A stretch of 64,000 nucleotides of DNA, from the IMG/VR virus record IMGVR_UViG_3300034073_003340, positions 371,857 to 435,856 of that record; one strand, 5' to 3'. The notes beneath the pieces were generated by a model. That model had not been told where the DNA came from and did no database searches. It was given only the letters and a program-made list of their open reading frames with translations. This document shows positions 29,172 through 41,588 of this stretch, piece after piece (the stretch's first letter is position 1; the number at the start of each line of letters is the position of its first letter). The position numbers and the translations under genes were made by a program.

Positions 29172-30821
29172 TTAGCGCTCTGAGACCTTCTTTGTGATCA
29201 CCTTTGGTGAGGTTTTCTTATTGGAGCGGGCATCGTTATCAAATTCCTCAAGAGAACCATATTCAAATTCAGCTTGTTTGATTATTTCACCATCAAGTTT
29301 GGGATCTCCAAATAGTTTTGCGCAAACTGCTTTGATGACCTGATTGATGTGGGACTGTGGGTTTCTCTTGATGGTTGCCCTCACGACTCTCAGCGCATGG
29401 GCTATCTGTCCTACCGTAAGCTTATAGCCTTTCATCATGCGTTCATTGACTTCTTCATCTTGGGTCTCGGCATGAATAGCTTCAAAAAAGCCCTTAGACA
29501 GCTCTTCTAGGCGTGCTCTGGTTTCGTGGACTGTAGGTGTAGAGGAAACCGGAGAGGCCCCGTGACGGACTCCTGCGAGTCTCTGAGCTTCCATGATTTG
29601 CTGTTGGAAGAATACTTCCTCGGTAGTCTCATCAACAATTTCTTCAACAGTTTCAGAATTAGCATCTTCATAGAACTGACGATACTCACCGATGGGCAAG
29701 ACGTCGATGCCAAGAACATAGGCACCTTCTGACAATGATACGGGGATGGTTCCTGCGGATACTTGGGCAGCAACAGCGCGGGCCGAGCCATAATCAGCAA
29801 AACCTTCTTGGACTAGAATCGTTTCAGTCCCAGCGGTTGCCCAGCTTGGATTCACAGCCGAACCAATGTTCTCCATGATCTGCGTGTGGACGACGACCAC
29901 AAAATTATTGGCTTCCATTACTGCTTCCTCCTCTGATAGTTCTTCTTCAATGCCGGCCTCACAAACAGGGAGGTCCAAATTATCATCAAACAGATCAACA
30001 TCAGGTCTGTTATTTTCCTGAATAGTATCTTCATAGAACTGGTCCTCCACATCGGTAAGGAGGGCATCAGTCTCCATGATATATTTCAAAGCACGAGCAC
30101 GAAATTCATCTTCAGACAATAGACCGAAATCGTGCATATAGGGTGTTCCCTGATAGTGCTTATAGCCCAGACTCAACACGGTGTTGACATCAGCACCCTC
30201 GCCTAGACCACCCCATTCAAGACATTCCTGTAGGTCTCCACGGTTCAAGCCTTCAGCTATTTCACTTAGACCTTCTGCTAGGCTTTCTGAGACTTTTCGA
30301 GCCACCATGATTGGGCTTTTGATGTTTTTGCCCAATAAGCCGCGCCTTTTGAAATCAGCATATGTTTCTTGGCGAGCCAACATCGCATGACTTTTAGAAG
30401 CACTAAAAGCAATGACCTGAAAATGCTCCATGTCAAATTCAGTACAGCCGCCATACATCGTTGTTGGCTTAAAGGTTACGCTCTTGAAAGCTTTGATGGC
30501 TTCATTTTTGTTAGAGTAACCCAACATGACTTTGTCTTCATCAAACTTGGATCCATCAACAGTCATTTGGTGCATGACGTATACTTTGGCATCCTTCTTT
30601 GGATTCTTCCTGACATAACAATCCAAATGCTCACCATCTGGACTGTGTGTTCCTTTGATATAACCATAGTGGGCCGGTACCTTGACTGCCCATTCCTCAC
30701 CAGTCTTTTTGTTTTTGCCTCTTCTGAATCCGTCGGCAGGAACTTCAATGCTAATATCCAGTCCTTCGAAGTTCATATGGCGGTGAAGCTTGGCTTCATT
30801 AAGGCTTCTAATAAAGTCCAT
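29172..30821 (-). CDS. Probable internal virion protein with N-terminal inorganic-pyrophosphatase-like (InPase) domain
   Basis: HYGYIKGTHSPDGEHLDCYV...FDEDKVMLGY PPase-fold motif, followed by an acidic region. Start set at MDF (TAATG overlap). Confidence 0.75.
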   Translation of the reverse strand: MDFIRSLNEAKLHRHMNFEGLDISIEVPADGFRRGKNKKTGEEWAVKVPAHYGYIKGTHSPDGEHLDCYVRKNPKKDAKVYVMHQMTVDGSKFDEDKVMLGYSNKNEAIKAFKSVTFKPTTMYGGCTEFDMEHFQVIAFSASKSHAMLARQETYADFKRRGLLGKNIKSPIMVARKVSESLAEGLSEIAEGLNRGDLQECLEWGGLGEGADVNTVLSLGYKHYQGTPYMHDFGLLSEDEFRARALKYIMETDALLTDVEDQFYEDTIQENNRPDVDLFDDNLDLPVCEAGIEEELSEEEAVMEANNFVVVVHTQIMENIGSAVNPSWATAGTETILVQEGFADYGSARAVAAQVSAGTIPVSLSEGAYVLGIDVLPIGEYRQFYEDANSETVEEIVDETTEEVFFQQQIMEAQRLAGVRHGASPVSSTPTVHETRARLEELSKGFFEAIHAETQDEEVNERMMKGYKLTVGQIAHALRVVRATIKRNPQSHINQVIKAVCAKLFGDPKLDGEIIKQAEFEYGSLEEFDNDARSNKKTSPKVITKKVSER

Positions 30822-31171
30822 TACCAGAGTATCCTCCATTTAAAGGTGTTACCAGTGTTGGCCTTCAGGGGTGTCACTTGATAACCTAGATCCACAAATG
30901 TCTTGCGGACGATGTTAATCTGTTCGGTCAAAGTTCTGATGTTGACATCGGTGAAAAGAGTTGCGAAATAGTCGCTTGGATCAATCACATCTTCATTTTG
31001 GTAATTCACATCCAATGGATTTGTCATTGGACTATTTGAAATTTCAACCTCATATTCGCCCTGTTCTATCGCTTGATAGATTGCTTGCTCGATGGCTCTG
31101 ATTTCCGCGTGAATGATTAGATTATTGCGGGAACCTGCTCTTGCTTCTGCTGCGGTAGGAAAGGTGCTCAT
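30821..31171 (-). CDS. Late hypothetical (virion) protein
   Basis: Coupled ORF in the late block; ends TFKWRILW. Confidence 0.7.
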   Translation of the reverse strand: MSTFPTAAEARAGSRNNLIIHAEIRAIEQAIYQAIEQGEYEVEISNSPMTNPLDVNYQNEDVIDPSDYFATLFTDVNIRTLTEQINIVRKTFVDLGYQVTPLKANTGNTFKWRILW

Positions 31172-33768: not shown

Positions 33769-34125
33769 TTACGCGGAAGTCTTCTTGGATCGCTTGATAC
33801 GCTTTGGGGCAACTTCGCTAAGAAAGATGCCAATTGCTTCCTGGATTAAAACAGCTTTGGTGTAAGATGGATCATTGTTGTAGGAGTTAAAAGCAGACTC
33901 CTTGACAATTCTGCTGCGTTCAAGACCATACATCTCATAGATGCTTTGGAGTTGAGCCAAGCTTTCGGCAGCATCAAAATCTATCGTCAATCCGTAGAGC
34001 GACTCAAGGACGGTTAAAACCCTTGAGAGACGATAACTTGCGCTGGTGTTGAGTTCATCAATAACCATGGCATCCTTCCAGGTAGGTAAGCTGCGATATT
34101 CTGTATATTTAGTCAGGTAAGTCAT
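33769..34125 (-). CDS. Late hypothetical protein
   Basis: 118-aa ORF in the late block. Confidence 0.7.
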   Translation of the reverse strand: MTYLTKYTEYRSLPTWKDAMVIDELNTSASYRLSRVLTVLESLYGLTIDFDAAESLAQLQSIYEMYGLERSRIVKESAFNSYNNDPSYTKAVLIQEAIGIFLSEVAPKRIKRSKKTSA

Positions 34126-34172
34126 TCAGTCAGCAAGATGTTACTGGCTACCTACCAGTAACAATCTATTGC

Positions 34173-34880
34173 TCAACGGAGAGATTCTAATATGCTCTTG
34201 ATTTGATCCTGGGCTACCAGAGCATTGGCTTTTGCCACATTGAATCTATTTTTGAAAACTTCGGCCGCCGCCGTTTCGTTCAATTCCATAGAACGAGTAT
34301 AGCGAGCTTTATGCTTTGCCGTTTCAAGACGATTTCGATTAAAATCTTCTTCCAAATCAATAACTTCTTGAACTCTAGAAGAATCAAAGCTCAAACCTTT
34401 GTTCATAAGCTTCATAATAGCTTGAGCTGACTCCTGAAGTCTCAGATTGCTCACAACATCGCGACGATTACTATCCACTACATTGTAGGTTCTAATCTCT
34501 TTGCCATTGCTCTCTTTTAGAGAGATCAGAACTTCAAAAGAACCAGGGCTAGTTTTCTGTGCCAAACTAGTTTCAGTTAGGGTAGTTCGACCAACAGTAG
34601 GGGAAGCCTGTTCTGAAATCTGATCCTCGCCGCTTATGTTGTTGAGTTTGGCAAGGATATTTTTCATAGCATCTATGTCTTCTCGACTAGTGCCAATTGA
34701 AGGAGAGTAATGAGCAGTATTATGACTTTCTCTCAGAGGCTGGTTTCCACCAGTGTAAAAGGCTTGCTGGGGCTGCTGAACGGCCGGAACATTCGTGCCC
34801 TCCATAATGGCTCTCAGTCTGGCCATTTCCTGGATATCTCGAGCACTAGGCATGTTTGAGGGAATTAGATCGTTTGACAT
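34173..34880 (-). CDS. Late hypothetical (probable head) protein
   Basis: 235 aa; MKNILAKL, LRES and LTET motifs. Confidence 0.72.
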   Translation of the reverse strand: MSNDLIPSNMPSARDIQEMARLRAIMEGTNVPAVQQPQQAFYTGGNQPLRESHNTAHYSPSIGTSREDIDAMKNILAKLNNISGEDQISEQASPTVGRTTLTETSLAQKTSPGSFEVLISLKESNGKEIRTYNVVDSNRRDVVSNLRLQESAQAIMKLMNKGLSFDSSRVQEVIDLEEDFNRNRLETAKHKARYTRSMELNETAAAEVFKNRFNVAKANALVAQDQIKSILESLR

Positions 34881-34881
34881 T

Positions 34882-35112
34882 TTATCTCCAAAGGTCCTCT
34901 AGACCACTTACAACATAAAAGAGGGATCCTTCACGTTGGGATCTTTCTAGAATACCCCTACTTACCATCTTTCTAGCAAGCTCTTTCTGTCGCTCATTGA
35001 GATCTTGTCTCTTAATGATTTGGCCTTCTTGTGATTCGATCATATCAAGTAATTCCTGTTCCTCACTGGAAACAGGAATCTGAATTCCGCCTCGAATCTC
35101 TAGAAAACGCAT
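34882..35112 (-). CDS. Small late protein, winged-helix-like
   Basis: MRFLEIRGGIQIPVSSEEQELL...LARKMVSRGILER. Start set at MRFLE, just after the upstream stop. Confidence 0.7.
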   Translation of the reverse strand: MRFLEIRGGIQIPVSSEEQELLDMIESQEGQIIKRQDLNERQKELARKMVSRGILERSQREGSLFYVVSGLEDLWR

Positions 35113-35113
35113 C

Positions 35114-36493
35114 TTACTTCTTGCGACGTTCGCCGAGATAATCACGACCCATCATCTGAGCCTGATTTGTTAGATCCTGAAGCTTCTGGATAAGGGACTT
35201 ATATTCAGAAAGACGAATATCAGCAAGCCCGGCCTGAATACTATTCAGGGCATCTTCAATTTGTGCCATTGCTTCGCTCTGTGAAGGAACGTTACCAACC
35301 GTCATGACCGGATCACTACCAACAGCACCGGGGATACCTGCGTCTGCGGGTAGATCCAAAGTTCCGGTAGTTTCTACATCATCAACTGGAACATCAAAAG
35401 AGAGATCTTCTGGCTCTTCCATCCCACCGTCCATATCGGCCATTGGTTCCTCTACTGGGTCAGCACCAATACCATCTAGTTCCATATCTACAATTTTGTC
35501 ACCTACTGGACCAGCCGCGAGAACGCCTTCGGGATCAATTTCAGGTGCTTCTACGACTTCAATACCGGCAAAGTCGTCGTTTTCTAGTGGTAGACCTGCG
35601 AGTTCGCGCAGGCGGAATAGTGGATTCACTGGCTTCATCATGCCTATCACTCCCTCGTCTAAACGGCTTACTTCTGATTCAGCAACCATTTCTAGTTGAC
35701 CGTTCATGATAACACCGATGGTTCCATTAGGTCCGTGAGGAATTTTGATTTGGCCAACAGCTTCGCCGACCATAACGTCCTCACCAATTTCAAATTCGAT
35801 CTCCTCATCAAAGCGAGGCTTGTGCTTGGCACCGCGTCCAAACTTGTCTACCTTGCGAGGGTCCTTACCGCCATCATGCGCACCAGCACCACTACGGGTC
35901 TTTACCGCTGCGATTACAGGATTACGTGGCTTCATGAGTTCAATCTTTTTCTTGGCGTCTTTGGCGCGCTTTTCTGGCTTCTTGCTCATCTTTTCCTCTA
36001 TTTCAACAGAATCGCGAACTGTCTGCTTTCTAAGGATTTCTGAGAGAGCTCGTCCAGTGCGATATGCCACGTTACGATCACCACATTCAATACGGTAAGC
36101 AACAGGGCTGGTAGCCTGGTATTCTACCTGGTTTTCATCCAACCAGTCAAGAACTCTATCCCTGGTTTGTTCAGAAACCTCAACGGAGTATGAAAATCCT
36201 TCATCAAGTTTTGTCATACATCCGAATGTCTCATCCAGGGTCTCGCCTGAACGTAGACTTTCAAACTTTGCGTTCAGATAATCATCGCTCATTGTGGTTC
36301 TCCCCAGCTTGATACCATATTTACCAAGTAATTTTTCGGCTTCGACCTGGCCCTGATAGGGTCGGCTTGTGTTTTTGAAAGCTTGAACCAAATTCATAAG
36401 GTCATTGCCGTTTACTTCACCTTTGAAGCGCTCAGCAGCTTTTTCGTCTACTCCTCGACGAATCAGTTCATCGGCAATATCCATCTTATCCAT
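35114..36493 (-). CDS. Large acidic late (probable head-internal) protein
   Basis: 459 aa; LDET, LDEG and RLRELAGL motifs. Confidence 0.75.
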   Translation of the reverse strand: MDKMDIADELIRRGVDEKAAERFKGEVNGNDLMNLVQAFKNTSRPYQGQVEAEKLLGKYGIKLGRTTMSDDYLNAKFESLRSGETLDETFGCMTKLDEGFSYSVEVSEQTRDRVLDWLDENQVEYQATSPVAYRIECGDRNVAYRTGRALSEILRKQTVRDSVEIEEKMSKKPEKRAKDAKKKIELMKPRNPVIAAVKTRSGAGAHDGGKDPRKVDKFGRGAKHKPRFDEEIEFEIGEDVMVGEAVGQIKIPHGPNGTIGVIMNGQLEMVAESEVSRLDEGVIGMMKPVNPLFRLRELAGLPLENDDFAGIEVVEAPEIDPEGVLAAGPVGDKIVDMELDGIGADPVEEPMADMDGGMEEPEDLSFDVPVDDVETTGTLDLPADAGIPGAVGSDPVMTVGNVPSQSEAMAQIEDALNSIQAGLADIRLSEYKSLIQKLQDLTNQAQMMGRDYLGERRKK

Positions 36494-36662
36494 GTTTCTT
36501 CGCCTTTTTGACTACAATGCGAGTCTTGATCTTCGGTCCACGAGATTCACGAATTATGCCGTCAAACTGACGAGCCCATAACACTGATGCCTGTTCTAGG
36601 AACTTTCGTTCCTCAACAGATATAGAAAGAGGGTCGTCCCCAAAGAGCTCAGAAAGAGTCAT
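36486..36662 (-). CDS. Small late protein (58 aa; true start inside the track ORF 36486..36923)
   Basis: MTLSELFGDD... begins 30 nt after the late box at 36692-36697. Confidence 0.55.
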   Translation of the reverse strand: MTLSELFGDDPLSISVEERKFLEQASVLWARQFDGIIRESRGPKIKTRIVVKKAKKHG

Positions 36663-36691
36663 TGATTTCTCACAATTAGGATATCCTTTGG

Positions 36692-36772
36692 TATTTAGCG
36701 TATCACTATCAAGTTGAACAGAATGTGGGTAGTTAAAGCAAGTGAGTGTATTCATTGGACTTTGAATAAATA
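36692..36772. promoter_or_regulatory. Back-to-back divergent late promoters
   Basis: TATTTA at 36692-36697 (leftward) and TAAATA at 36767-36772 (rightward, 32 nt before ATG 36805). Confidence 0.6.
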
Positions 36773-36804
36773 TCACGCAAGTCGCGTATCGGGAGACTAC
36801 CTTC

Positions 36805-37050
36805 ATGGGTGATATAATCAAGAGTGTAGTCGAGATGATCGCTAAAGGAGACGGAGGGGCTTTAACGGCTCTTCTCCTTGGTATCATTGGAGTCTTGGGT
36901 TGGTATTGTTTTCGCTTGACCAAGCAATTGGAAAAGAAAGACGAAAAGATTTACAAGATTATCGATGACTATTCAAAAAACAACATTACCATAACTGAAG
37001 CCATGAATGGCCTCAAACTGGTTCTAATTGAGATCAAGGCAAAACTCTAA
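36805..37050 (+). CDS. Small single-TM membrane protein, BhlA-like holin candidate
   Basis: 81 aa; GGGAG RBS; TM ALTALLLGIIGVLGWYCF followed by basic RLTKQLEKKDEKIYKIID and a helical tail, the layout of BhlA-type holins. Confidence 0.55.
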   Translation: MGDIIKSVVEMIAKGDGGALTALLLGIIGVLGWYCFRLTKQLEKKDEKIYKIIDDYSKNNITITEAMNGLKLVLIEIKAKL

Positions 37051-38720
37051 TGATGAAATGGCTGTTTGAAAGCAAAGAAGCTGCTGCCAAACGGACGTTG
37101 CGTGCTGAGACCTTGAAAGCGGCTCTGGAATCCAGTGAAGCTCTTGAAAAAGCCGCCAAAGGAACTTTGGATCTTGCGGCTGATGTAACAGAAACTCTGC
37201 AGGCCAGAATTGATGACTACACGACTCAAATTGATCAGACAGCAAGACTGCTGAATGACGCCCTGATGTTGGTAAGTCCAGAAGGCGAAATACAGAGTTA
37301 TAATCCAGCAGCTGAATCCATGTTTGGCTGGAAAAAGAGGGAAGTAATTGGCAAGAAGATTAGTCTCCTTTTTCAATTCCCAAAAGAAACCGAACTAGAC
37401 GTTAGCTTCATGGAATCTCTGGTAACTCAGGTGAATACCAATGACGAGTTTACCAGTGTAAATTATGAAGATTTCATGGGTATACGAAAAGACGGTAGTA
37501 TCATCTACATAGACGTCTCCGCTAGTAAAGTGGTTCGCAGCGACAAAAAAGTTTACTATATCATGTTGGTCAGAGATGTCACACATCAGGTCAACAATAG
37601 CAAAATGATTCGAGAATTAGCTGAGCATAATCAAGAACTACTCACTACGATTGATGCGTCTAGCACCGGATTTATGATTCTCAATCCAGATGGTTCTGAC
37701 TTCAGTATAAGCTTTGTAAATGAAGGATTTGCCAAGCTTATTGGTTTCAAACGATCCGCTATAAAAAAGATGAATCTCAGGGATCTGTTTGGAACAGATT
37801 CTACCTTCTGGACCATTCGCAGAACTTTGCTTGAAGGTGTTGAAGGACGTCACGAAATACAGTTTGATATCGGGGTCAGCCAGACGGTTGTTTTCGAGGT
37901 CCATTTGACACCAGTGAAGAAGGGACCCAATCCGGTTCAATGGATATTGGTTTTCTATGAAACAACTGAGCTAAAGAAAGCCTATCAAGAACTTGGAAAA
38001 AGCCAAGCTACATTCAAAGCATTCAGTGACGCTAGCTCTGAAAGTTTGATCATCCATGACCATACACGCCTAATGGAATGGAACGACAGGGTCATACTCT
38101 TGACAGGATATTCAGACTCGGAACTTGAAACTATGAATCCTTCTGATTTACTTCATCCTCTTGAAAGAGAGAGAATGTTGTTCAAGAAGAATGAAGTCGA
38201 AGATTCCTCATACGAGACCCTGTTCCTCACCAAGAGCGGTGAAGTAAAGGATGTGGCAATCAACAGTAAGCCAATTGAATGGGACAATACCGAGGCCCGA
38301 ATTGCTATCGTCAGAGACGTCACAGCATTCAAGGATGTAGAAACTCAACTCAAAACATCAAGAGAGCGATATAAGACAGTAGTGGACAACACCATTGATC
38401 TCATTGTTTGCTTTAATAAAGACTTTGAAATTACTTTTTCAAATCAAACATTTCGTGATTACTTTGATGTAGAGGTTGAAGATATAAACGGGTTCAGTCT
38501 CTTGGAGATCATACCTGAGTCAGACCACCAGAAATTCATCAAATATATGTTGGAAGTTCTACCGGGCCAAGAGATTCGCCGCGGAGTTCATAGGGTCAAG
38601 AGACATGACGAGATACGCTGGCAGGACTGGATCGATCGAGGAATTTTTGATGAAGAAGGTATCTTGATAGAAGTTCAAAGCGTCATACGTGACATCACAC
38701 ATCTGATTCCCAGTCAATAA
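37050..38720 (+). CDS. Multi-PAS sensor protein (coiled coil plus four PAS/PAC domains, no output domain)
   Basis: Four units starting YNPAAESMFGW, FVNEGFAKLIGF, WNDRVILLTGY and FSNQTFRDYF and ending VRDVT, FYETT, VRDVT and IRDIT; stops 6 aa after the last PAS; TAATG overlap with the upstream gene. Confidence 0.9.
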   Translation: MMKWLFESKEAAAKRTLRAETLKAALESSEALEKAAKGTLDLAADVTETLQARIDDYTTQIDQTARLLNDALMLVSPEGEIQSYNPAAESMFGWKKREVIGKKISLLFQFPKETELDVSFMESLVTQVNTNDEFTSVNYEDFMGIRKDGSIIYIDVSASKVVRSDKKVYYIMLVRDVTHQVNNSKMIRELAEHNQELLTTIDASSTGFMILNPDGSDFSISFVNEGFAKLIGFKRSAIKKMNLRDLFGTDSTFWTIRRTLLEGVEGRHEIQFDIGVSQTVVFEVHLTPVKKGPNPVQWILVFYETTELKKAYQELGKSQATFKAFSDASSESLIIHDHTRLMEWNDRVILLTGYSDSELETMNPSDLLHPLERERMLFKKNEVEDSSYETLFLTKSGEVKDVAINSKPIEWDNTEARIAIVRDVTAFKDVETQLKTSRERYKTVVDNTIDLIVCFNKDFEITFSNQTFRDYFDVEVEDINGFSLLEIIPESDHQKFIKYMLEVLPGQEIRRGVHRVKRHDEIRWQDWIDRGIFDEEGILIEVQSVIRDITHLIPSQ

Positions 38721-38723
38721 CAC

Positions 38724-38751
38724 TTGACCCCAGAGTTCTAGATGCTATCTC
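38724..38751 (+). promoter_or_regulatory. Possible sigma70 promoter of the 31-aa ORF
   Basis: TTGACC-N16-TATCTC. Confidence 0.4.
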
Positions 38752-38771
38752 TTTGATTAGAGGAGACGCAC

Positions 38772-38867
38772 ATGGAAATTATCAAACGCGGAATCTATAC
38801 TATCATCATTGATCGGGAACATGAACGACGGGCAATCGAGGCAATTCGAGCTCGCAAGTCTTCCTGA
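38772..38867 (+). CDS. 31-aa small protein not in the ORF track
   Basis: AGAGGAG RBS, then ATG: MEIIKRGIYTIIIDREHERRAIEAIRARKSS-TGA, followed directly by a terminator. Confidence 0.6.
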   Translation: MEIIKRGIYTIIIDREHERRAIEAIRARKSS

Positions 38868-38870
38868 CGC

Positions 38871-38906
38871 AAAAGAGCCCCGGAGTTTCCCCCGGGGCTC
38901 TTTTTT
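38871..38906. terminator. Bidirectional terminator with GAAA loop (minus strand)
   Basis: AAAAGAGCCCCGGAG-TTTC-CCCCGGGGCTCTTTTTT. Confidence 0.88.
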
Positions 38907-38922
38907 AGATCCTAATCAAGGA

Positions 38923-39267
38923 TTAGAAATCAGCAGCAGCTACCACGAAAGTGGCAGTTGAGGCACCAGTTGCGCGAAGCGCAGCCTGGCCAGCAGCATT
39001 GAAGTCTGCCAGAGTGTTTGGAGCAACCGAAGTTCCGAAAACATCAGCGTGCTCAACAGCAAACGCAAAACCAGTTGCGGTTACTGCGCCCAGGATAACT
39101 GGCTGTGCGCGAGTAGAGATGATTTCGATAACCTTGTCCAGGTTAGAAGTGCCGTTAGCAGGATCAGCGGTCAGGTCAAAGTTAGAAACAGTGACAGTGT
39201 AACGCTTAACTGCGCCGGACAGGAACTGGTCATTGCCAGAAGCGAAGCCGTTTACTTTCTCAGTCAT
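38923..39267 (-). CDS. Small virion structural protein (decoration-like)
   Basis: Ala/Thr-rich 114 aa; AGGAG RBS; late box at 39302-39307. Confidence 0.75.
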   Translation of the reverse strand: MTEKVNGFASGNDQFLSGAVKRYTVTVSNFDLTADPANGTSNLDKVIEIISTRAQPVILGAVTATGFAFAVEHADVFGTSVAPNTLADFNAAGQAALRATGASTATFVVAAADF

Positions 39268-39301
39268 AGTGAATTCTCCTATAGAGAGTTTCTGTTAGAA
39301 G

Positions 39302-39307
39302 TATTTA
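39302..39307 (-). promoter_or_regulatory. Late promoter box TAAATA
   Basis: TATTTA 35 nt upstream of the 39267 start. Confidence 0.6.
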
Positions 39308-39321
39308 TCTAAGAGCATCTT

Positions 39322-39513
39322 TTAGCGACGTAAAACTGTTGGTTTGGTATGAGGCTTACGCTTCTTCTCAGCAGCGTCATAGATACCCTTATGCCCATTT
39401 GAATCGAATCCTGCACCAATGGCACCCACCGAGGTTGCCACTGCGCCTGCGGCTGTAGCACCGCTGCTAGCAGTTTCTAAAATTGGTTTACCTACAATCT
39501 CACTCCATCGCAT
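39322..39513 (-). CDS. Small late head-internal-type protein
   Basis: MRWSEIVGKPILETASSGATAAGAVAT, a leader/protease-site pattern. Confidence 0.7.
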   Translation of the reverse strand: MRWSEIVGKPILETASSGATAAGAVATSVGAIGAGFDSNGHKGIYDAAEKKRKPHTKPTVLRR

Positions 39514-39514
39514 A

Positions 39515-40435
39515 TTACAACCTCACACCAAACCGTTTGAGTTCCGCCTTGGGAACTTCTACTTTCAAGTTATTTAAGCGCTCAACATAGATTTTGTAGA
39601 TTTTCAAACGTTCAGGAATCGTATATGTTGATGTCATGGTAACTGATATAGTTTCAAACGACGTCATATAATCCAAAATTTTTGAGGGTAGATGTTGATC
39701 AAAAACCATCTCTACCACTTGTTTTGGATCATCTATAATATCAGTTCTAGCCGGGGTGGCACTTGGGTAAATTTTCAAGAACTCTTCTTTGGTAAGTTCC
39801 TTGAATTCCTTTACTCTCCCGTTGCCGTCCTTGCGCATAGGACGATGTCTATATCTCCAGACACACCCCTTATCATGGAAAAAGGTAGGACCTACTCTGG
39901 CCACCATCTCTCCATTTTCTTCCAACACCCAATCACTATTGAATGCCACTAACGCTTTGATAAGCTCAGTTCTATATAGACCTTTGAGGCAGCTTTTCTT
40001 TGATGTTTGTCCCCAATAATAGAAACCATCGGTATACTCAGGATCGTATTCAGGTGAAAAATAGCTGAACTTCTGCCACTCATAATTGCCAAACATGAAG
40101 TCAACCTGAACATACCCGTTTTTAGGGTCTCCGTTGATCGGAACCGCGGTGAAGATCTGGTTGTTACCAGGGCGAGCCTTGACATACTGTGATCCCAAGA
40201 GAGCAGATAGCTGTTGTGCTACCTTCTCCTGATCATATAGCTCAATTCGCATATTCAGATCAATGTCGCCACTCGTTGGATTCTTACCGGCACTACCAAG
40301 TAGGTGGTTCATGTATTTCCCACCCTGGATGCTTGAATCCTTCCAGTTTCTAGTTAGCCAGTCTAATGTCTTGGGTATGTCCTCTTTGGCGATCCTCTGT
40401 GTAATACCCTCAAACGCCTTACCGCCCATCTTCAA
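39515..40435 (-). CDS. Pol-beta superfamily nucleotidyltransferase
   Basis: LLGSAGKNPTSGDIDL (GS-x(n)-DxD) plus a third Asp in VQVDFM. Confidence 0.78.
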   Translation of the reverse strand: MKMGGKAFEGITQRIAKEDIPKTLDWLTRNWKDSSIQGGKYMNHLLGSAGKNPTSGDIDLNMRIELYDQEKVAQQLSALLGSQYVKARPGNNQIFTAVPINGDPKNGYVQVDFMFGNYEWQKFSYFSPEYDPEYTDGFYYWGQTSKKSCLKGLYRTELIKALVAFNSDWVLEENGEMVARVGPTFFHDKGCVWRYRHRPMRKDGNGRVKEFKELTKEEFLKIYPSATPARTDIIDDPKQVVEMVFDQHLPSKILDYMTSFETISVTMTSTYTIPERLKIYKIYVERLNNLKVEVPKAELKRFGVRL

Positions 40436-41588
40436 TCCTTTTTCTTGTATCGCTGAACATATTCAATGTTCGTTGATGTAATTGTCCCGAATATACTAGT
40501 AATTCTTGCCTGGCTCCGACCCTGTAAACGTGATGTAGAATATGTCGATTGTCTAGATATCGTTTGAGAAGCGTATCTAGTCTTTTCAGACGTTTTTCCT
40601 TGGGCCAGTCTTTGGTTCTAGATAGGAAGCTGGGACGAGCCGGTCTACTGCCTCCTACCAACCAGTATTTGATAAAATGAGTAAAGCGATTGGCCGCCTG
40701 GAATGATTCTCGATCAACTATTTTGAATTTACCCTGATTGCTTTCAACTACGACACCTTCCACAAACGAGCCGGCTCCAATAACACTTGGTTGTTCAAGC
40801 ACTAGAACTCGATAGGCAATATCTTTAAACATCAGAATCATAGATCGGAATACCTGCTTGAGGTCATCGCGTTCCTTTGAAATCTCTTTCTTGAGATCAT
40901 TCCAATTCCGATCACCACATTTGTGATGCTTCTTGGATAGGTTGATATCTAGGATGTCAAAAACGTTGAAGCCTTCAATCCTAGTGTCTTGCTGAAACCA
41001 ATGATCCAATACCGTTCTGAGTTGCTTGGCGTGGGTTGACAGTCTAGCTTGGACCAATTGCCTCGACGTTTGCGGGTTTATAAACGCCAACCACCGTTGC
41101 TTTTCTTTAAAAAGCTCTCTGGAAAATCCATCTGGACTTTGATGGTATTCAACATCAAGCTTACACTTGAAATCGTCAAGGAGCCTTATATGCCCTTCAC
41201 CAAATTCAAAATCAGCAGAAGTGATAATGAGAAGACCGCTGATTGAACTAGATAACAGGTATCGAATAGTATTGGGCATATTACCGTGGATGATTTCAGC
41301 ACCCAATTTCTGCCCAGGCTTGATAAGATTTTCCTTGACTAGGGCTTCAACTATCATAGCACCAACGTTATGGGCAATGCGATAACTCGAAGCCCAGCAT
41401 TCATTTGGCCAATCTTCTACACAATAGCAGAATTGACCTCCCTTGCGGTAACTATAATATCTTCCAGCGTCGTCTAAACCAAATCCCAAGAAGCTACCGT
41501 CAAGCTTTTCGCTCGGCCACCACATTAAGTCAAGGCTATCATATATGGCCCTGGCACTTAGTTCTTCATAATGGGGAATACTAACCAT
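40419..41588 (-). CDS. ATP-dependent ligase-fold (covalent nucleotidyltransferase) protein
   Basis: SEKLDGS (motif I KxDG), GAEIIHG (III), VEGVV (IV) and KFKIVD (V). Confidence 0.72.
   Translation of the reverse strand: MVSIPHYEELSARAIYDSLDLMWWPSEKLDGSFLGFGLDDAGRYYSYRKGGQFCYCVEDWPNECWASSYRIAHNVGAMIVEALVKENLIKPGQKLGAEIIHGNMPNTIRYLLSSSISGLLIITSADFEFGEGHIRLLDDFKCKLDVEYHQSPDGFSRELFKEKQRWLAFINPQTSRQLVQARLSTHAKQLRTVLDHWFQQDTRIEGFNVFDILDINLSKKHHKCGDRNWNDLKKEISKERDDLKQVFRSMILMFKDIAYRVLVLEQPSVIGAGSFVEGVVVESNQGKFKIVDRESFQAANRFTHFIKYWLVGGSRPARPSFLSRTKDWPKEKRLKRLDTLLKRYLDNRHILHHVYRVGARQELLVYSGQLHQRTLNMFSDTRKRIEDGR

What the first reader, a model, noticed from the sequence alone, without database searches (positions are those of the whole stretch)
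36767..38720. Holin-like membrane protein translationally coupled to an output-less four-PAS sensor, under a late promoter
The sequence shows a plus-strand two-gene operon inserted divergently in the minus-strand virion block, with a TAAATA late box, a GGGAG RBS, an 81-aa single-TM protein, a TAATG overlap, and a 556-aa protein made of a coiled coil and four complete PAS/PAC domains. It ends cleanly with no kinase, GGDEF, EAL or DNA-binding domain. PAS domains are established small-ligand, redox and oxygen sensors, and the small protein has a BhlA-holin-like layout. I infer a sensor-gated lysis timer in which the PAS protein binds the holin's cytoplasmic helix through its coiled coil and ties lysis to host physiology. 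An alternative is a membrane-tethered dominant-negative decoy of host PAS kinases or cyclases. I know of no described system of this form.
Basis: partly seen in the sequence, partly recalled or inferred. Interest (0 to 1): 0.82.

Follow-up and report, generated by a model that had tools for sequence, protein, structure and literature searches.

The report
Small membrane protein plus PAS partner
A huge phage carries a widely conserved two-gene unit of unknown function, a tiny membrane-spanning protein made together with a sensor-type (PAS) protein that has no output part; it may time host lysis, and it could be tested in two cultured relatives.

Summary

The window comes from a 436-kb uncultured phage related to Agrobacterium phage Atu_ph07 and Sinorhizobium phage Phosso.

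- **The pair is a family.** A PAS gene follows the small gene in 22 of 22 loci examined. Partners range from 188 aa (one PAS) to about 560 aa (four PAS). None has a kinase, GGDEF, EAL or DNA-binding domain, so this copy is not a truncation.
- **The small protein is real.** dN/dS is about 0.06, and its Atu_ph07 homologue gp48 was detected by mass spectrometry. It is N-out/C-in, and its membrane helix continues into a highly conserved cytoplasmic helix with heptad periodicity.
- **Holin status is unproven.** The BhlA layout matches, but the homology signal is weak (hhalign 36%, no Pfam hit), and no endolysin lies next to it.
- **Sensing is uncertain.** PAS1 resembles haem PAS domains but lacks the haem-binding His. 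PAS2 resembles LOV domains but lacks the Cys.
- **The promoter box is real.** [A/C]TAAATA resembles a T4 late promoter, but it also precedes nrdA.

Best reading, at about 0.35: a membrane-tethered PAS regulator of a holin-like protein. The function is untested.

The parts
36692..36697 (-). TAAATA box of the divergent minus-strand operon (58-aa gene 36486-36662 and onward). It mirrors the box of the pair.
   Evidence: It lies 29 nt before the minus-strand ATG. It is conserved as TATTTA in 6 relatives.
36767..36772 (+). TAAATA promoter-like box (aaTAAATAt), a variant of the T4 late promoter.
   Evidence: It lies 32 nt before the ATG. A TAAATA lies 28-54 nt upstream of the small gene in 20 of 22 loci. 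16 of the 23 TAAATA sites in the window fall in the 9% of it that is intergenic. In Aeh1 the late promoter is CTAAATA (PMC1524935).
36791..36795 (+). GGGAG ribosome-binding site.
   Evidence: It lies 9 nt before the ATG. It is conserved as GGGAG in L006, L007 and L009.
36805..37050 (+). Gene for the 81-aa single-pass membrane protein (N-out/C-in): short amphipathic helix 2-13, Gly break at 14-16, then one continuous helix 17-80.
   Evidence: dN/dS is about 0.06. The Atu_ph07 homologue gp48 was seen by MS. The family has 165 representatives.
36856..36912 (+). Transmembrane segment, residues 18-36.
   Evidence: Kyte-Doolittle 19-residue mean is 1.93. 78 of 80 family members have more K+R after the segment than before it.
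36913..37047 (+). Cytoplasmic tail, residues 37-81. It is the most conserved part (..KKDEKIYKIIDDYSKNNITITEAMNGLKxVLIEIKAKL) and has a heptad pattern.
   Evidence: In the close family its entropy is 0.52, against 1.24 for the TM segment. Its 3.5-residue periodicity beats shuffles, p about 0.004.
37047..37052 (+). TAATG stop/start overlap (translational coupling).
   Evidence: Across 22 loci: TAATG in 13, a 4-nt overlap in 2, a 1-nt gap in 4, and a 22-91 nt gap in 3.
37050..38720 (+). Gene for the 556-aa cytoplasmic PAS-only protein.
37059..37253 (+). N-terminal long amphipathic helix, residues 4-68.
   Evidence: The AF2 helix has low confidence. Its 3.5-3.6 periodicity beats shuffles, p about 0.001. 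It is present in all partners, including distant ones.
37245..37604 (+). PAS1, residues 66-185. It is closest to the haem PAS domains of DosP and FixL, but Phe120 sits at the position of the proximal His.
37620..37991 (+). PAS2, residues 191-314. It is LOV-like, with NLRDLF in place of NCRFLQ (Leu243 at the Cys position). Phosso lacks this domain.
38004..38345 (+). PAS3, residues 319-432.
   Evidence: No PDB sequence match.
38358..38717 (+). PAS4, residues 437-556. It is the most conserved domain.
   Evidence: Entropy 0.88. No PDB sequence match.
38772..38867 (+). 31-aa ORF with its own GAGGAG site. It is probably the remnant of a third plus-strand gene that is 75-92 aa in some relatives.
38864..38908 (.). 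Bidirectional intrinsic terminator between the operon and the convergent minus-strand gene.
   Evidence: 13-bp stem with an A-run before and a T-run after; dG -26 kcal/mol, z -5.0.

Best explanation
**What it is.** This is a conserved two-protein module of T4-related huge phages.

**The membrane protein.** The 81-aa protein inserts in the inner membrane with its N-terminus out and its C-terminus in. Its membrane helix continues as a cytoplasmic helix of about 45 residues with a heptad pattern.

**The PAS protein.** It is made from the same mRNA, mostly by stop/start coupling. It begins with an amphipathic helix of about 65 residues and carries one to four PAS domains, with no enzymatic or DNA-binding output.

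**The mechanism I think most likely.**
- The two long helices pair, which holds the PAS array at the inner face of the membrane.
- The small protein is the effector, and it acts like a BhlA/UviB-type holin.
- The PAS protein is its cytoplasmic regulator, an antiholin-type brake or trigger. The module would then set when the membrane is permeabilised late in infection.

**Shown here:** gene structure, coupling, conservation, topology signals, helices, absence of an output domain, and protein-level existence of the small protein.

**Inferred:** pairing of the two proteins, hole formation, and any signal sensed.
For: **The module is conserved**
- A PAS partner follows the small gene in 22 of 22 loci, with a stop/start overlap or a 1-nt gap in 19 of them.
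- This holds even in very distant relatives, where only the N-helix and one or two PAS domains remain: L027 at 188 aa and L012 at 288 aa.
- The two proteins are never fused. The only long protein among the top 150 hits, 3,151 aa and repetitive, is an apparent chance match.

**The PAS protein has no output**
- About 55 close PAS clusters are all 550-567 aa and carry only PAS domains. Scores then drop sharply, from 489 to 136 bits, to bacterial PAS kinases and cyclases.

**The small protein fits a membrane effector**
- It is N-out/C-in in 78 of 80 family members.
- The AF2 model shows one continuous helix at residues 17-80 with pLDDT about 95.
- Both the tail and the PAS N-helix show heptad periodicity.

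**Signals of a link to BhlA/UviB holin-like peptides**
- The layouts are collinear, and hhalign against a BhlA family alignment gives 36% probability (E=3.7e-4, 44 columns).
- 4 of 80 members hit the BhlA-type PHROG 2429, with best E=1.3e-4.
- 16 of 100 ESM-Atlas feature hits carry the Holin_BhlA family.

**Signals of late expression**
- The [A/C]TAAATA box is conserved upstream of the small gene.
- The neighbouring genes are homologues of proteins found in the Atu_ph07 virion preparation.
- In L027 the module follows a tail-collar gene after an 18-nt gap.

**Other support**
- Atu_ph07 gp48 was found in a PEG-precipitated lysate fraction with 3 peptides and 37% coverage, while the soluble PAS protein gp49 was not.
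- No holin is known for Atu_ph07, and its lysis mechanism is described as unknown.
Against: - No Pfam holin family matches any of 24 members, even at E<=10. The BhlA signal is below what would establish homology.
- No endolysin or spanin lies next to the pair in any locus examined.
- The transmembrane segment, the working part of a holin, is less conserved than the tail.
- The tail is far more conserved than the N-helix of its supposed partner (entropy 0.52 against 1.34). This hints at another, more constrained partner.
- Insertions of 7-15 residues in the tail are not matched by changes in partner N-helix length.
- The same promoter-like box precedes nrdA and lies upstream of the helicase and SSB genes, so late-only expression is not shown.
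- PAS1 and PAS2 lack the canonical haem and flavin-adduct residues, so what would be sensed is unknown.
- The detection of gp48 in a virion preparation could instead point to a structural role.
Confidence: 0.35

Rival explanations
1. **Membrane-anchored scaffold or decoy.** The small protein is only an anchor. It tethers the PAS array under the membrane, where the PAS domains bind host or phage proteins. These could be host PAS-containing kinases, cyclases or cell-cycle regulators, which the array would titrate or relocate. Lysis is not involved.
For: - PAS domains commonly work through homo- and heterodimerisation. The closest folds are tandem-PAS regulators such as PpsR, NifL, FixL and DosP.
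- The cofactor-ligating residues are missing in PAS1 and PAS2, which fits binding modules rather than ligand sensors.
- The number of PAS domains varies from 1 to 4.
- The transmembrane segment is poorly conserved, as expected of a plain anchor.
- Output-less PAS proteins do exist: PAS2's best PDB hits are short LOV proteins.
Against: - The extreme conservation of the small protein's tail across 165 clusters is more than a simple anchor needs.
- The family occurs in phages from very different environments, and so probably different hosts. A specific host kinase target is therefore less likely.
- Late-type regulation and placement among virion genes are odd for host takeover.
Confidence: 0.27
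2. **Virion or assembly role.** The small hydrophobic protein is a genuine virion component, for example one delivered into the host membrane at infection. The PAS protein is its non-structural chaperone or assembly partner.
For: - Atu_ph07 gp48 is in the virion MS list and gp49 is not.
- The pair sits among genes whose homologues are virion-associated.
- In L027 it directly follows a large SLT-domain protein and a tail-collar protein.
- The two proteins are always separate polypeptides.
Against: - The Atu_ph07 virions were only partially purified, by PEG precipitation and differential centrifugation without a density gradient.
- The same list contains RNR, SSB, a RecA-like protein and terminase. 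A late membrane protein could therefore co-purify with membrane debris.
- I know of no case of a multi-PAS protein acting as a chaperone.
Confidence: 0.12
3. **Another membrane function.** The pair acts in superinfection exclusion, sensing of membrane stress or energy state, or lysis inhibition, without the small protein being the holin itself.
For: - T4-type phages carry small membrane proteins for immunity and lysis inhibition (established knowledge of T4 Imm, Sp, RI and RIII).
- The topology leaves about 15 residues in the periplasm and a conserved cytoplasmic tail.
Against: - No similarity to any such protein was found.
- No defence-system family matches.
- No evidence specific to this reading was found.
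Confidence: 0.15

Closest known systems
BhlA/UviB holin-like peptides (Pfam PF10960; SPbeta BhlA = yomB)
   Same: - Both are about 70-80 aa, with a short N-terminus, a G/P turn, one transmembrane helix, a basic stretch and a conserved helical charged tail that ends ...E(L/I)(R/K)xIKxK.
- The weak profile alignment is collinear.
   Different: - There is no Pfam hit, and homology is not established.
- In SPbeta, BhlA sits beside a second holin and an endolysin. Here there is no endolysin, and a PAS gene is always attached.
T4 holin T with its antiholins RI and RIII (lysis inhibition)
   Same: The concept is shared: a holin whose firing is controlled by a dedicated partner that binds a soluble domain. 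As in T4-type phages, the lysis genes are scattered rather than grouped in a cassette (established knowledge).
   Different: - There is no sequence similarity.
- T has a large periplasmic domain, and RIII is a small protein without sensor domains.
- Here the partner is a PAS array, and hole formation is untested.
Output-less PAS proteins (short LOV proteins such as PpSB1-LOV) and tandem-PAS regulators (PpsR, NifL)
   Same: - Both act without an enzymatic output, through helices that flank the PAS core.
- PAS2's best PDB hits are short LOV proteins. PpsR and NifL are among the best fold matches.
   Different: - The phage protein has up to four PAS domains and lacks the LOV Cys.
- It is genetically coupled to a membrane protein.
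- PpsR and NifL carry, or act on, DNA-binding or AAA+ partners.
Haem PAS oxygen sensors FixL and DosP
   Same: PAS1's best sequence matches in the PDB are DosP (E=1e-9) and FixL (E about 3e-8). The FixL tandem PAS fold matches with target-normalised TM-score about 0.7.
   Different: - Phe120 replaces the proximal His.
- There is no kinase or phosphodiesterase output.
Membrane-anchored PAS sensors such as Aer and ArcB
   Same: A PAS domain is held at the inner face of the membrane next to a long helix.
   Different: Here the anchor is a separate, coupled polypeptide, and no signalling domain follows.

Membership tests
PAS domain superfamily | Significant match to PAS profiles, and a PAS fold. 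| tested here: met
   Four stretches match, with PAS_9 at 144.7 bits against a cut-off of 27. The AF2 model has four PAS folds with pLDDT 80-90, and Foldseek gives E down to 5e-17 against PAS proteins.
Sensor histidine kinase (the GenBank name of Atu_ph07 gp49) | HisKA/DHp and HATPase_c domains. | tested here: not met
   Pfam finds only PAS families in the window protein and in about 55 homologous clusters. The protein ends 8 residues after PAS4.
Haem-binding PAS (FixL/DosP type) | A proximal histidine in the F-alpha helix. | tested here: not met
   In the alignment to DosP, Phe120 lies opposite the His of PAHPEY. Phe is the family consensus at that position (FME).
LOV domain | The adduct-forming Cys in the NCRFLQ motif. 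| tested here: not met
   PAS2 has NLRDLF, aligned to the DCRFLQ of the short LOV proteins.
BhlA/UviB holin family (PF10960) | Match to the family profile. | tested here: not met
   None of 24 members matches at E<=10, whereas SPbeta BhlA scores 88 bits as a control.
BhlA/UviB holin family (PF10960) | Remote homology by profile-profile comparison. | tested here: inconclusive
   hhalign gives 36% (E=3.7e-4) and 18% against the BhlA alignment, and 0.6% against the single sequence. 4 of 80 members hit PHROG 2429. The ESM Atlas shows 16 of 100 hits.
Holin (functional class) | A small protein with at least one transmembrane helix and a charged hydrophilic C-terminus. | tested here: met
Holin (functional class) | Genetic linkage to an endolysin or spanin. 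| tested here: not met
   No lysin domain lies next to the pair in the window, Phosso, Atu_ph07, L006, L007, L009, L012 or L027. This is a weak criterion for T4-type phages.
Holin (functional class) | Lethal hole formation that can be triggered by energy poisons and releases endolysin. | not testable with these tools
   This needs expression experiments.
T4-type late promoter | TATAAATA, or an accepted variant, at about -10, upstream of late genes. | tested here: inconclusive
   The exact TATAAATA is absent from the window. The variant [A/C]TAAATA is strongly enriched in intergenic DNA, oriented toward genes, and conserved upstream of the module. CTAAATA is the late motif in Aeh1. However, it also precedes nrdA, and there are no transcript data.
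i-spanin (Rz-like) | N-in/C-out topology with a periplasmic coiled coil. | tested here: not met
   Positive charges lie after the transmembrane segment in 78 of 80 members, which gives a cytoplasmic tail. Only 1 of 80 members hit a spanin PHROG.

The most novel reading that the evidence does not exclude
The PAS array is a signal-responsive cytoplasmic antiholin that gates a BhlA-like single-pass holin. That would be a lysis clock coupled to host physiology through sensor domains. It would be widespread in huge T4-related phages, with lineage-specific gain of PAS domains tuning what is sensed.
Probability: 0.22. Interest if true: 0.85.

Novelty: new variant of a known kind. Interest (0 to 1): 0.6.

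Why it matters
**Why it matters**
- How huge phages of the Atu_ph07 and Rak2 type lyse their hosts is unknown. The Atu_ph07 paper says so explicitly.
- How any phage couples late events to host physiology is largely an open question.

**What makes it testable**
- This module is conserved across at least 165 clusters of the small protein at 50% identity.
- It is under strong purifying selection.
- It is present in two cultured phages, Atu_ph07 and Phosso, so the question can be addressed directly at the bench.

**What each outcome would mean**
- If the PAS protein controls a holin-like partner, it would be the first sensor-domain regulator of phage lysis.
- If it does not, it is still a widespread viral use of output-less PAS arrays tethered to the membrane by a separate polypeptide.

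**Annotation fix**
- The analysis also corrects a database name: Atu_ph07 gp49 is not a histidine kinase.

Tried and rejected
**Promoter and RNA searches**
- The exact T4 late consensus TATAAATA has 0 hits in the window.
- The sigma-70 promoter scan found no more sites than shuffled sequence (12 against 11.5).
- Rfam gave no match in 34000-41000.

**Searches with the small protein**
- tblastn of two small-protein family members (the window's and P0175) against phage records found nothing, although Phosso and Atu_ph07 do carry it.
- A profile of the family against PDB sequences gave only chance coiled-coil hits.
- PADLOC gave no defence-family match.

**Tests of pairing between the two proteins**
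- BLASTP and hhalign between the small protein's tail and the PAS N-helix found no homology, despite a shared IDDY motif.
- I looked for correlated insertions between tail length and partner N-helix length and found none.

**Searches that could not run or gave nothing**
- Only one 'RNA' run holds any of this DNA, and it is flagged as probably DNA. It gave a single 179-nt contig across the gene junction, so there is no transcript information.
- An ESM-Atlas search with the PAS N-helix was uninformative.
- The literature searches found no paper on this pair.

**Readings rejected**
- The protein is not a truncated kinase or cyclase.
- The pair was not recently acquired by horizontal transfer: its GC content of 0.40-0.43 is like its neighbours'.
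- The small protein is not a spanin.
Full report
**1.

- The window has ORFs at 36805..37050 (+, 81 aa) and 37050..38720 (+, 556 aa). They share one base in CTCTAATGATG.
- TAAATA lies at 36767-36772. GGGAG lies at 36791-36795, 9 nt before the ATG.
- Pfam finds four PAS stretches in the large protein (PAS_9 E=1.3e-42) and no other domain.
- The AlphaFold2 model has mean pLDDT 76.7, with 80-90 in the domains, and pTM 0.34. It shows a long helix at residues 4-68 and four PAS folds joined by helices. The chain ends 8 residues after PAS4.
- The small protein has one hydrophobic segment, residues 18-36.
- The ORF list also shows a minus-strand ORF at 36486..36923 that overlaps the small gene. This is an over-extension. 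The real gene is 58 aa (36486..36662), as in the relatives.
- The operon ends at a strong bidirectional terminator at 38864-38908. Before it lies a 31-aa ORF that looks like the remnant of a third gene, which is 75-92 aa in some relatives.

**2. Where the window comes from**

- It is part of IMG/VR contig UViG_3300034073_003340, 435,856 bp.
- No phage record is similar at the DNA level.
- At the protein level the nearest cultured relatives are Sinorhizobium phage Phosso (469 kb) and Agrobacterium phage Atu_ph07 (490 kb). The DnaB-type helicase is 67.5% and 56.4% identical to theirs.
- The 64 kb mostly encode DNA and nucleotide metabolism: topoisomerase II, CCA-adding enzyme, RNR alpha and beta, DnaB, DNA helicase, SSB and UvsX.
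- The genes immediately around the pair are homologues of Atu_ph07 gp42, 43, 44, 45, 46 and gp50. All of these except gp45 were detected in that phage's virion preparation (PMC6102473, Table S5).

**3.

- Phosso and Atu_ph07 carry the same pair in the same setting, a plus-strand island among minus-strand genes. Both have an 81-aa gene, followed by a 434-aa PAS protein in Phosso and a 536-aa one in Atu_ph07.
- The small protein has 46 close homologues. A profile search found 165 cluster representatives at E<=1e-3, nearly all 78-105 aa with the same layout.
- The PAS protein has about 55 homologous clusters at 43-100% identity. All full-length ones are 550-567 aa and carry only PAS domains, on contigs of up to 470 kb. 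Scores then fall sharply from 489 to 136 bits, to bacterial PAS kinases and cyclases.
- In all 22 loci examined, a PAS-protein gene follows the small gene. The junction is a TAATG overlap in 13, a 4-nt overlap in 2, a 1-nt gap in 4, and a 22-91 nt gap in 3.
- In distant relatives the partner is shorter but keeps the N-helix and first PAS domain: 188 aa in L027 (one PAS) and 288 aa in L012.
- The core of the module is therefore the small membrane protein plus an N-helix and PAS1. Further PAS domains were added in some lineages; Phosso lacks PAS2.
- No complete partner has an output domain, and the two proteins are never fused.

**4. The small protein**

- It is under strong purifying selection: dN/dS is about 0.06 and synonymous sites are saturated.
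- Its homologue exists as a protein. Atu_ph07 gp48 (9.11 kDa) was detected with 3 peptides and 37% coverage, while gp49, the PAS protein, was not.
- That preparation was only PEG-precipitated and differentially centrifuged. It also contained RNR, SSB and terminase. I therefore read the detection as 'made late and particulate', not as proof of a structural role.
- Positive charges lie after the hydrophobic segment in 78 of 80 family members, which gives an N-out/C-in topology.
- AlphaFold2 predicts a short helix at 2-13, a Gly break, and one continuous helix at 17-80 (mean pLDDT 89.6).
- The cytoplasmic tail has a clear 3.5-residue hydrophobic period (p about 0.004).
- The tail is the most conserved part of the protein, with entropy 0.52 against 1.24 for the membrane segment. 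N60 is nearly invariant.

**5. Is it a holin?**

- The layout matches BhlA/UviB peptides. My alignment of BhlA relatives shows the same order of elements, and both families end in ...E(L/I)(R/K)xIKxK.
- The statistics are weak:
  - No Pfam hit for any of 24 members.
  - hhalign gives 0.6% against SPbeta BhlA alone, and 36% and 18% against the BhlA family.
  - 4 of 80 members hit the BhlA-type PHROG.
  - 16 of 100 ESM-Atlas feature hits carry Holin_BhlA.
- I rate family membership as inconclusive.
- No endolysin or spanin is adjacent in any locus. This is a weak argument, because T4-type phages scatter their lysis genes.
- The Atu_ph07 authors found no holin and call the lysis mechanism unknown.

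**6. The PAS protein**

- Its N-terminal helix also has a 3.5-3.6-residue period (p about 0.001), and it is present in every partner.
- The best fold matches are tandem-PAS sensors and regulators: DosP, PpsR, Brucella LOV-PAS-HK, FixL, NifL and MmoS.
- By sequence, PAS1 is closest to the haem PAS domains of DosP and FixL. However, Phe120 lies where DosP has its haem-binding His.
- PAS2 is closest to short LOV proteins and phototropin LOV, but has NLRDLF where they have NCRFLQ.
- PAS3 and PAS4 have no PDB sequence match. PAS4 is the most conserved domain.
- Oxygen sensing through haem, or light sensing through a flavin adduct, is therefore unlikely. Other ligands, or pure protein binding, remain possible.

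**7. The promoter box**

- The exact T4 consensus TATAAATA is absent from the window.
- TAAATA is not over-represented overall: 23 sites against about 28 expected.
- However, 16 of the 23 sites lie in the 9% of the window that is intergenic. By my own binomial estimate the probability of that is about 2e-12.
- Nearly all of these point at a gene start, mostly 20-35 nt downstream, and are usually preceded by C or A.
- A TAAATA lies 28-54 nt upstream of the small gene in 20 of 22 loci. A mirrored copy serves the divergent gene.
- In T4-type phages the first base of the late motif varies, and Aeh1 uses CTAAATA (PMC1524935).
- So the box is real and resembles a T4 late promoter.
- It also precedes nrdA and lies upstream of the helicase and SSB genes, so its temporal class is open.
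- In L027 the module follows a tail-collar gene after an 18-nt gap, which fits late expression.

**8. Interpretation**

- The most economical reading is a two-protein complex at the inner face of the membrane, formed by the two long amphipathic helices. The small protein is the effector and the PAS protein its regulator.
- I put the holin/antiholin-type version at about 0.35.
- A membrane-anchored scaffold or decoy that acts on other proteins is at about 0.27.
- A virion or assembly role is at about 0.12.
- Other membrane functions are at about 0.15.
- Three points weigh against simple tail-to-N-helix pairing:
  - The tail is much more conserved than the N-helix.
  - Insertions in the tail are not mirrored in the partner.
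  - The two segments are not homologous.

**9. Novelty**

- I found no paper describing this pair.
- The parts are of known kinds. The conserved pairing is new.

Noticed in passing
window, e.g. 12394, 26788, 27944, 31555, 36692, 39302, 43271, 48436/48447: [A/C]TAAATA boxes sit mostly 20-35 nt before start codons on the coding strand. 16 of the 23 sites lie in the 9% of the window that is intergenic, and two of them form divergent pairs. This is probably this phage's main promoter element. It precedes nrdA as well as the virion-type genes.
   Followed up: partly
window 38772-38867 (+): A 31-aa ORF with its own GAGGAG site weakly resembles the start of a third plus-strand gene. That gene is 88-92 aa in L006 and L007, 75 aa in Phosso, and absent in L009. 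The ORF is probably a decaying accessory gene of the operon.
   Followed up: partly
window 38864-38908: A strong bidirectional intrinsic terminator (13-bp GC-rich stem, A-run before and T-run after, dG -26 kcal/mol, z -5.0) lies between the operon and the convergent 114-aa gene.
   Followed up: yes
window 38923-39267 (-): This 114-aa protein has its own TAAATA box. It is a homologue of Atu_ph07 gp50, which was detected in every gel band of the virion preparation (7 peptides, 57% coverage). It shares the motif ..IEIISTRAQP.. with the L026 homologue. It is probably an abundant virion protein of unknown role.
   Followed up: partly
window 37407-37409 (Phe120) and 37776-37778 (Leu243): PAS1 is closest to the haem PAS domains of DosP and FixL but has Phe at the position of the proximal His. 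PAS2 is closest to LOV domains but has Leu at the position of the adduct Cys. Both look like cofactor sites that have degenerated.
   Followed up: yes
L002 5659-7269 (Atu_ph07 gp49, AUZ94861): [quoted passage not shown] The protein and all its relatives contain only PAS domains.
   Followed up: yes
window 36486-36923 (-): The mechanical ORF list gives a 145-aa ORF that overlaps the small gene's start. The real gene is the 58-aa ORF at 36486-36662, which matches the 57-58-aa genes in L007 and L009.
   Followed up: yes
window 29172-30839 (-): This protein's N-terminal 140 residues or so match a domain found in very large phage virion proteins (DarB-like, 'mega protein'). Its positional counterparts in related loci carry Pfam InPase. 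Its homologue Atu_ph07 gp42 is virion-associated.
   Followed up: no
whole window: DNA that is near-identical, or shares over half of the sampled words, with window 36500-39300 occurs in subsurface, soil and wastewater metagenomes from different studies. This suggests the phage is widespread.
   Followed up: no
L027 1-5591: In a 62.5-kb contig that is not from a huge phage, the module has a single-PAS partner of 188 aa. It directly follows a protein of over 1000 aa with an SLT domain and a tail-collar protein, and it precedes a weak metallophosphoesterase-like gene.
   Followed up: partly
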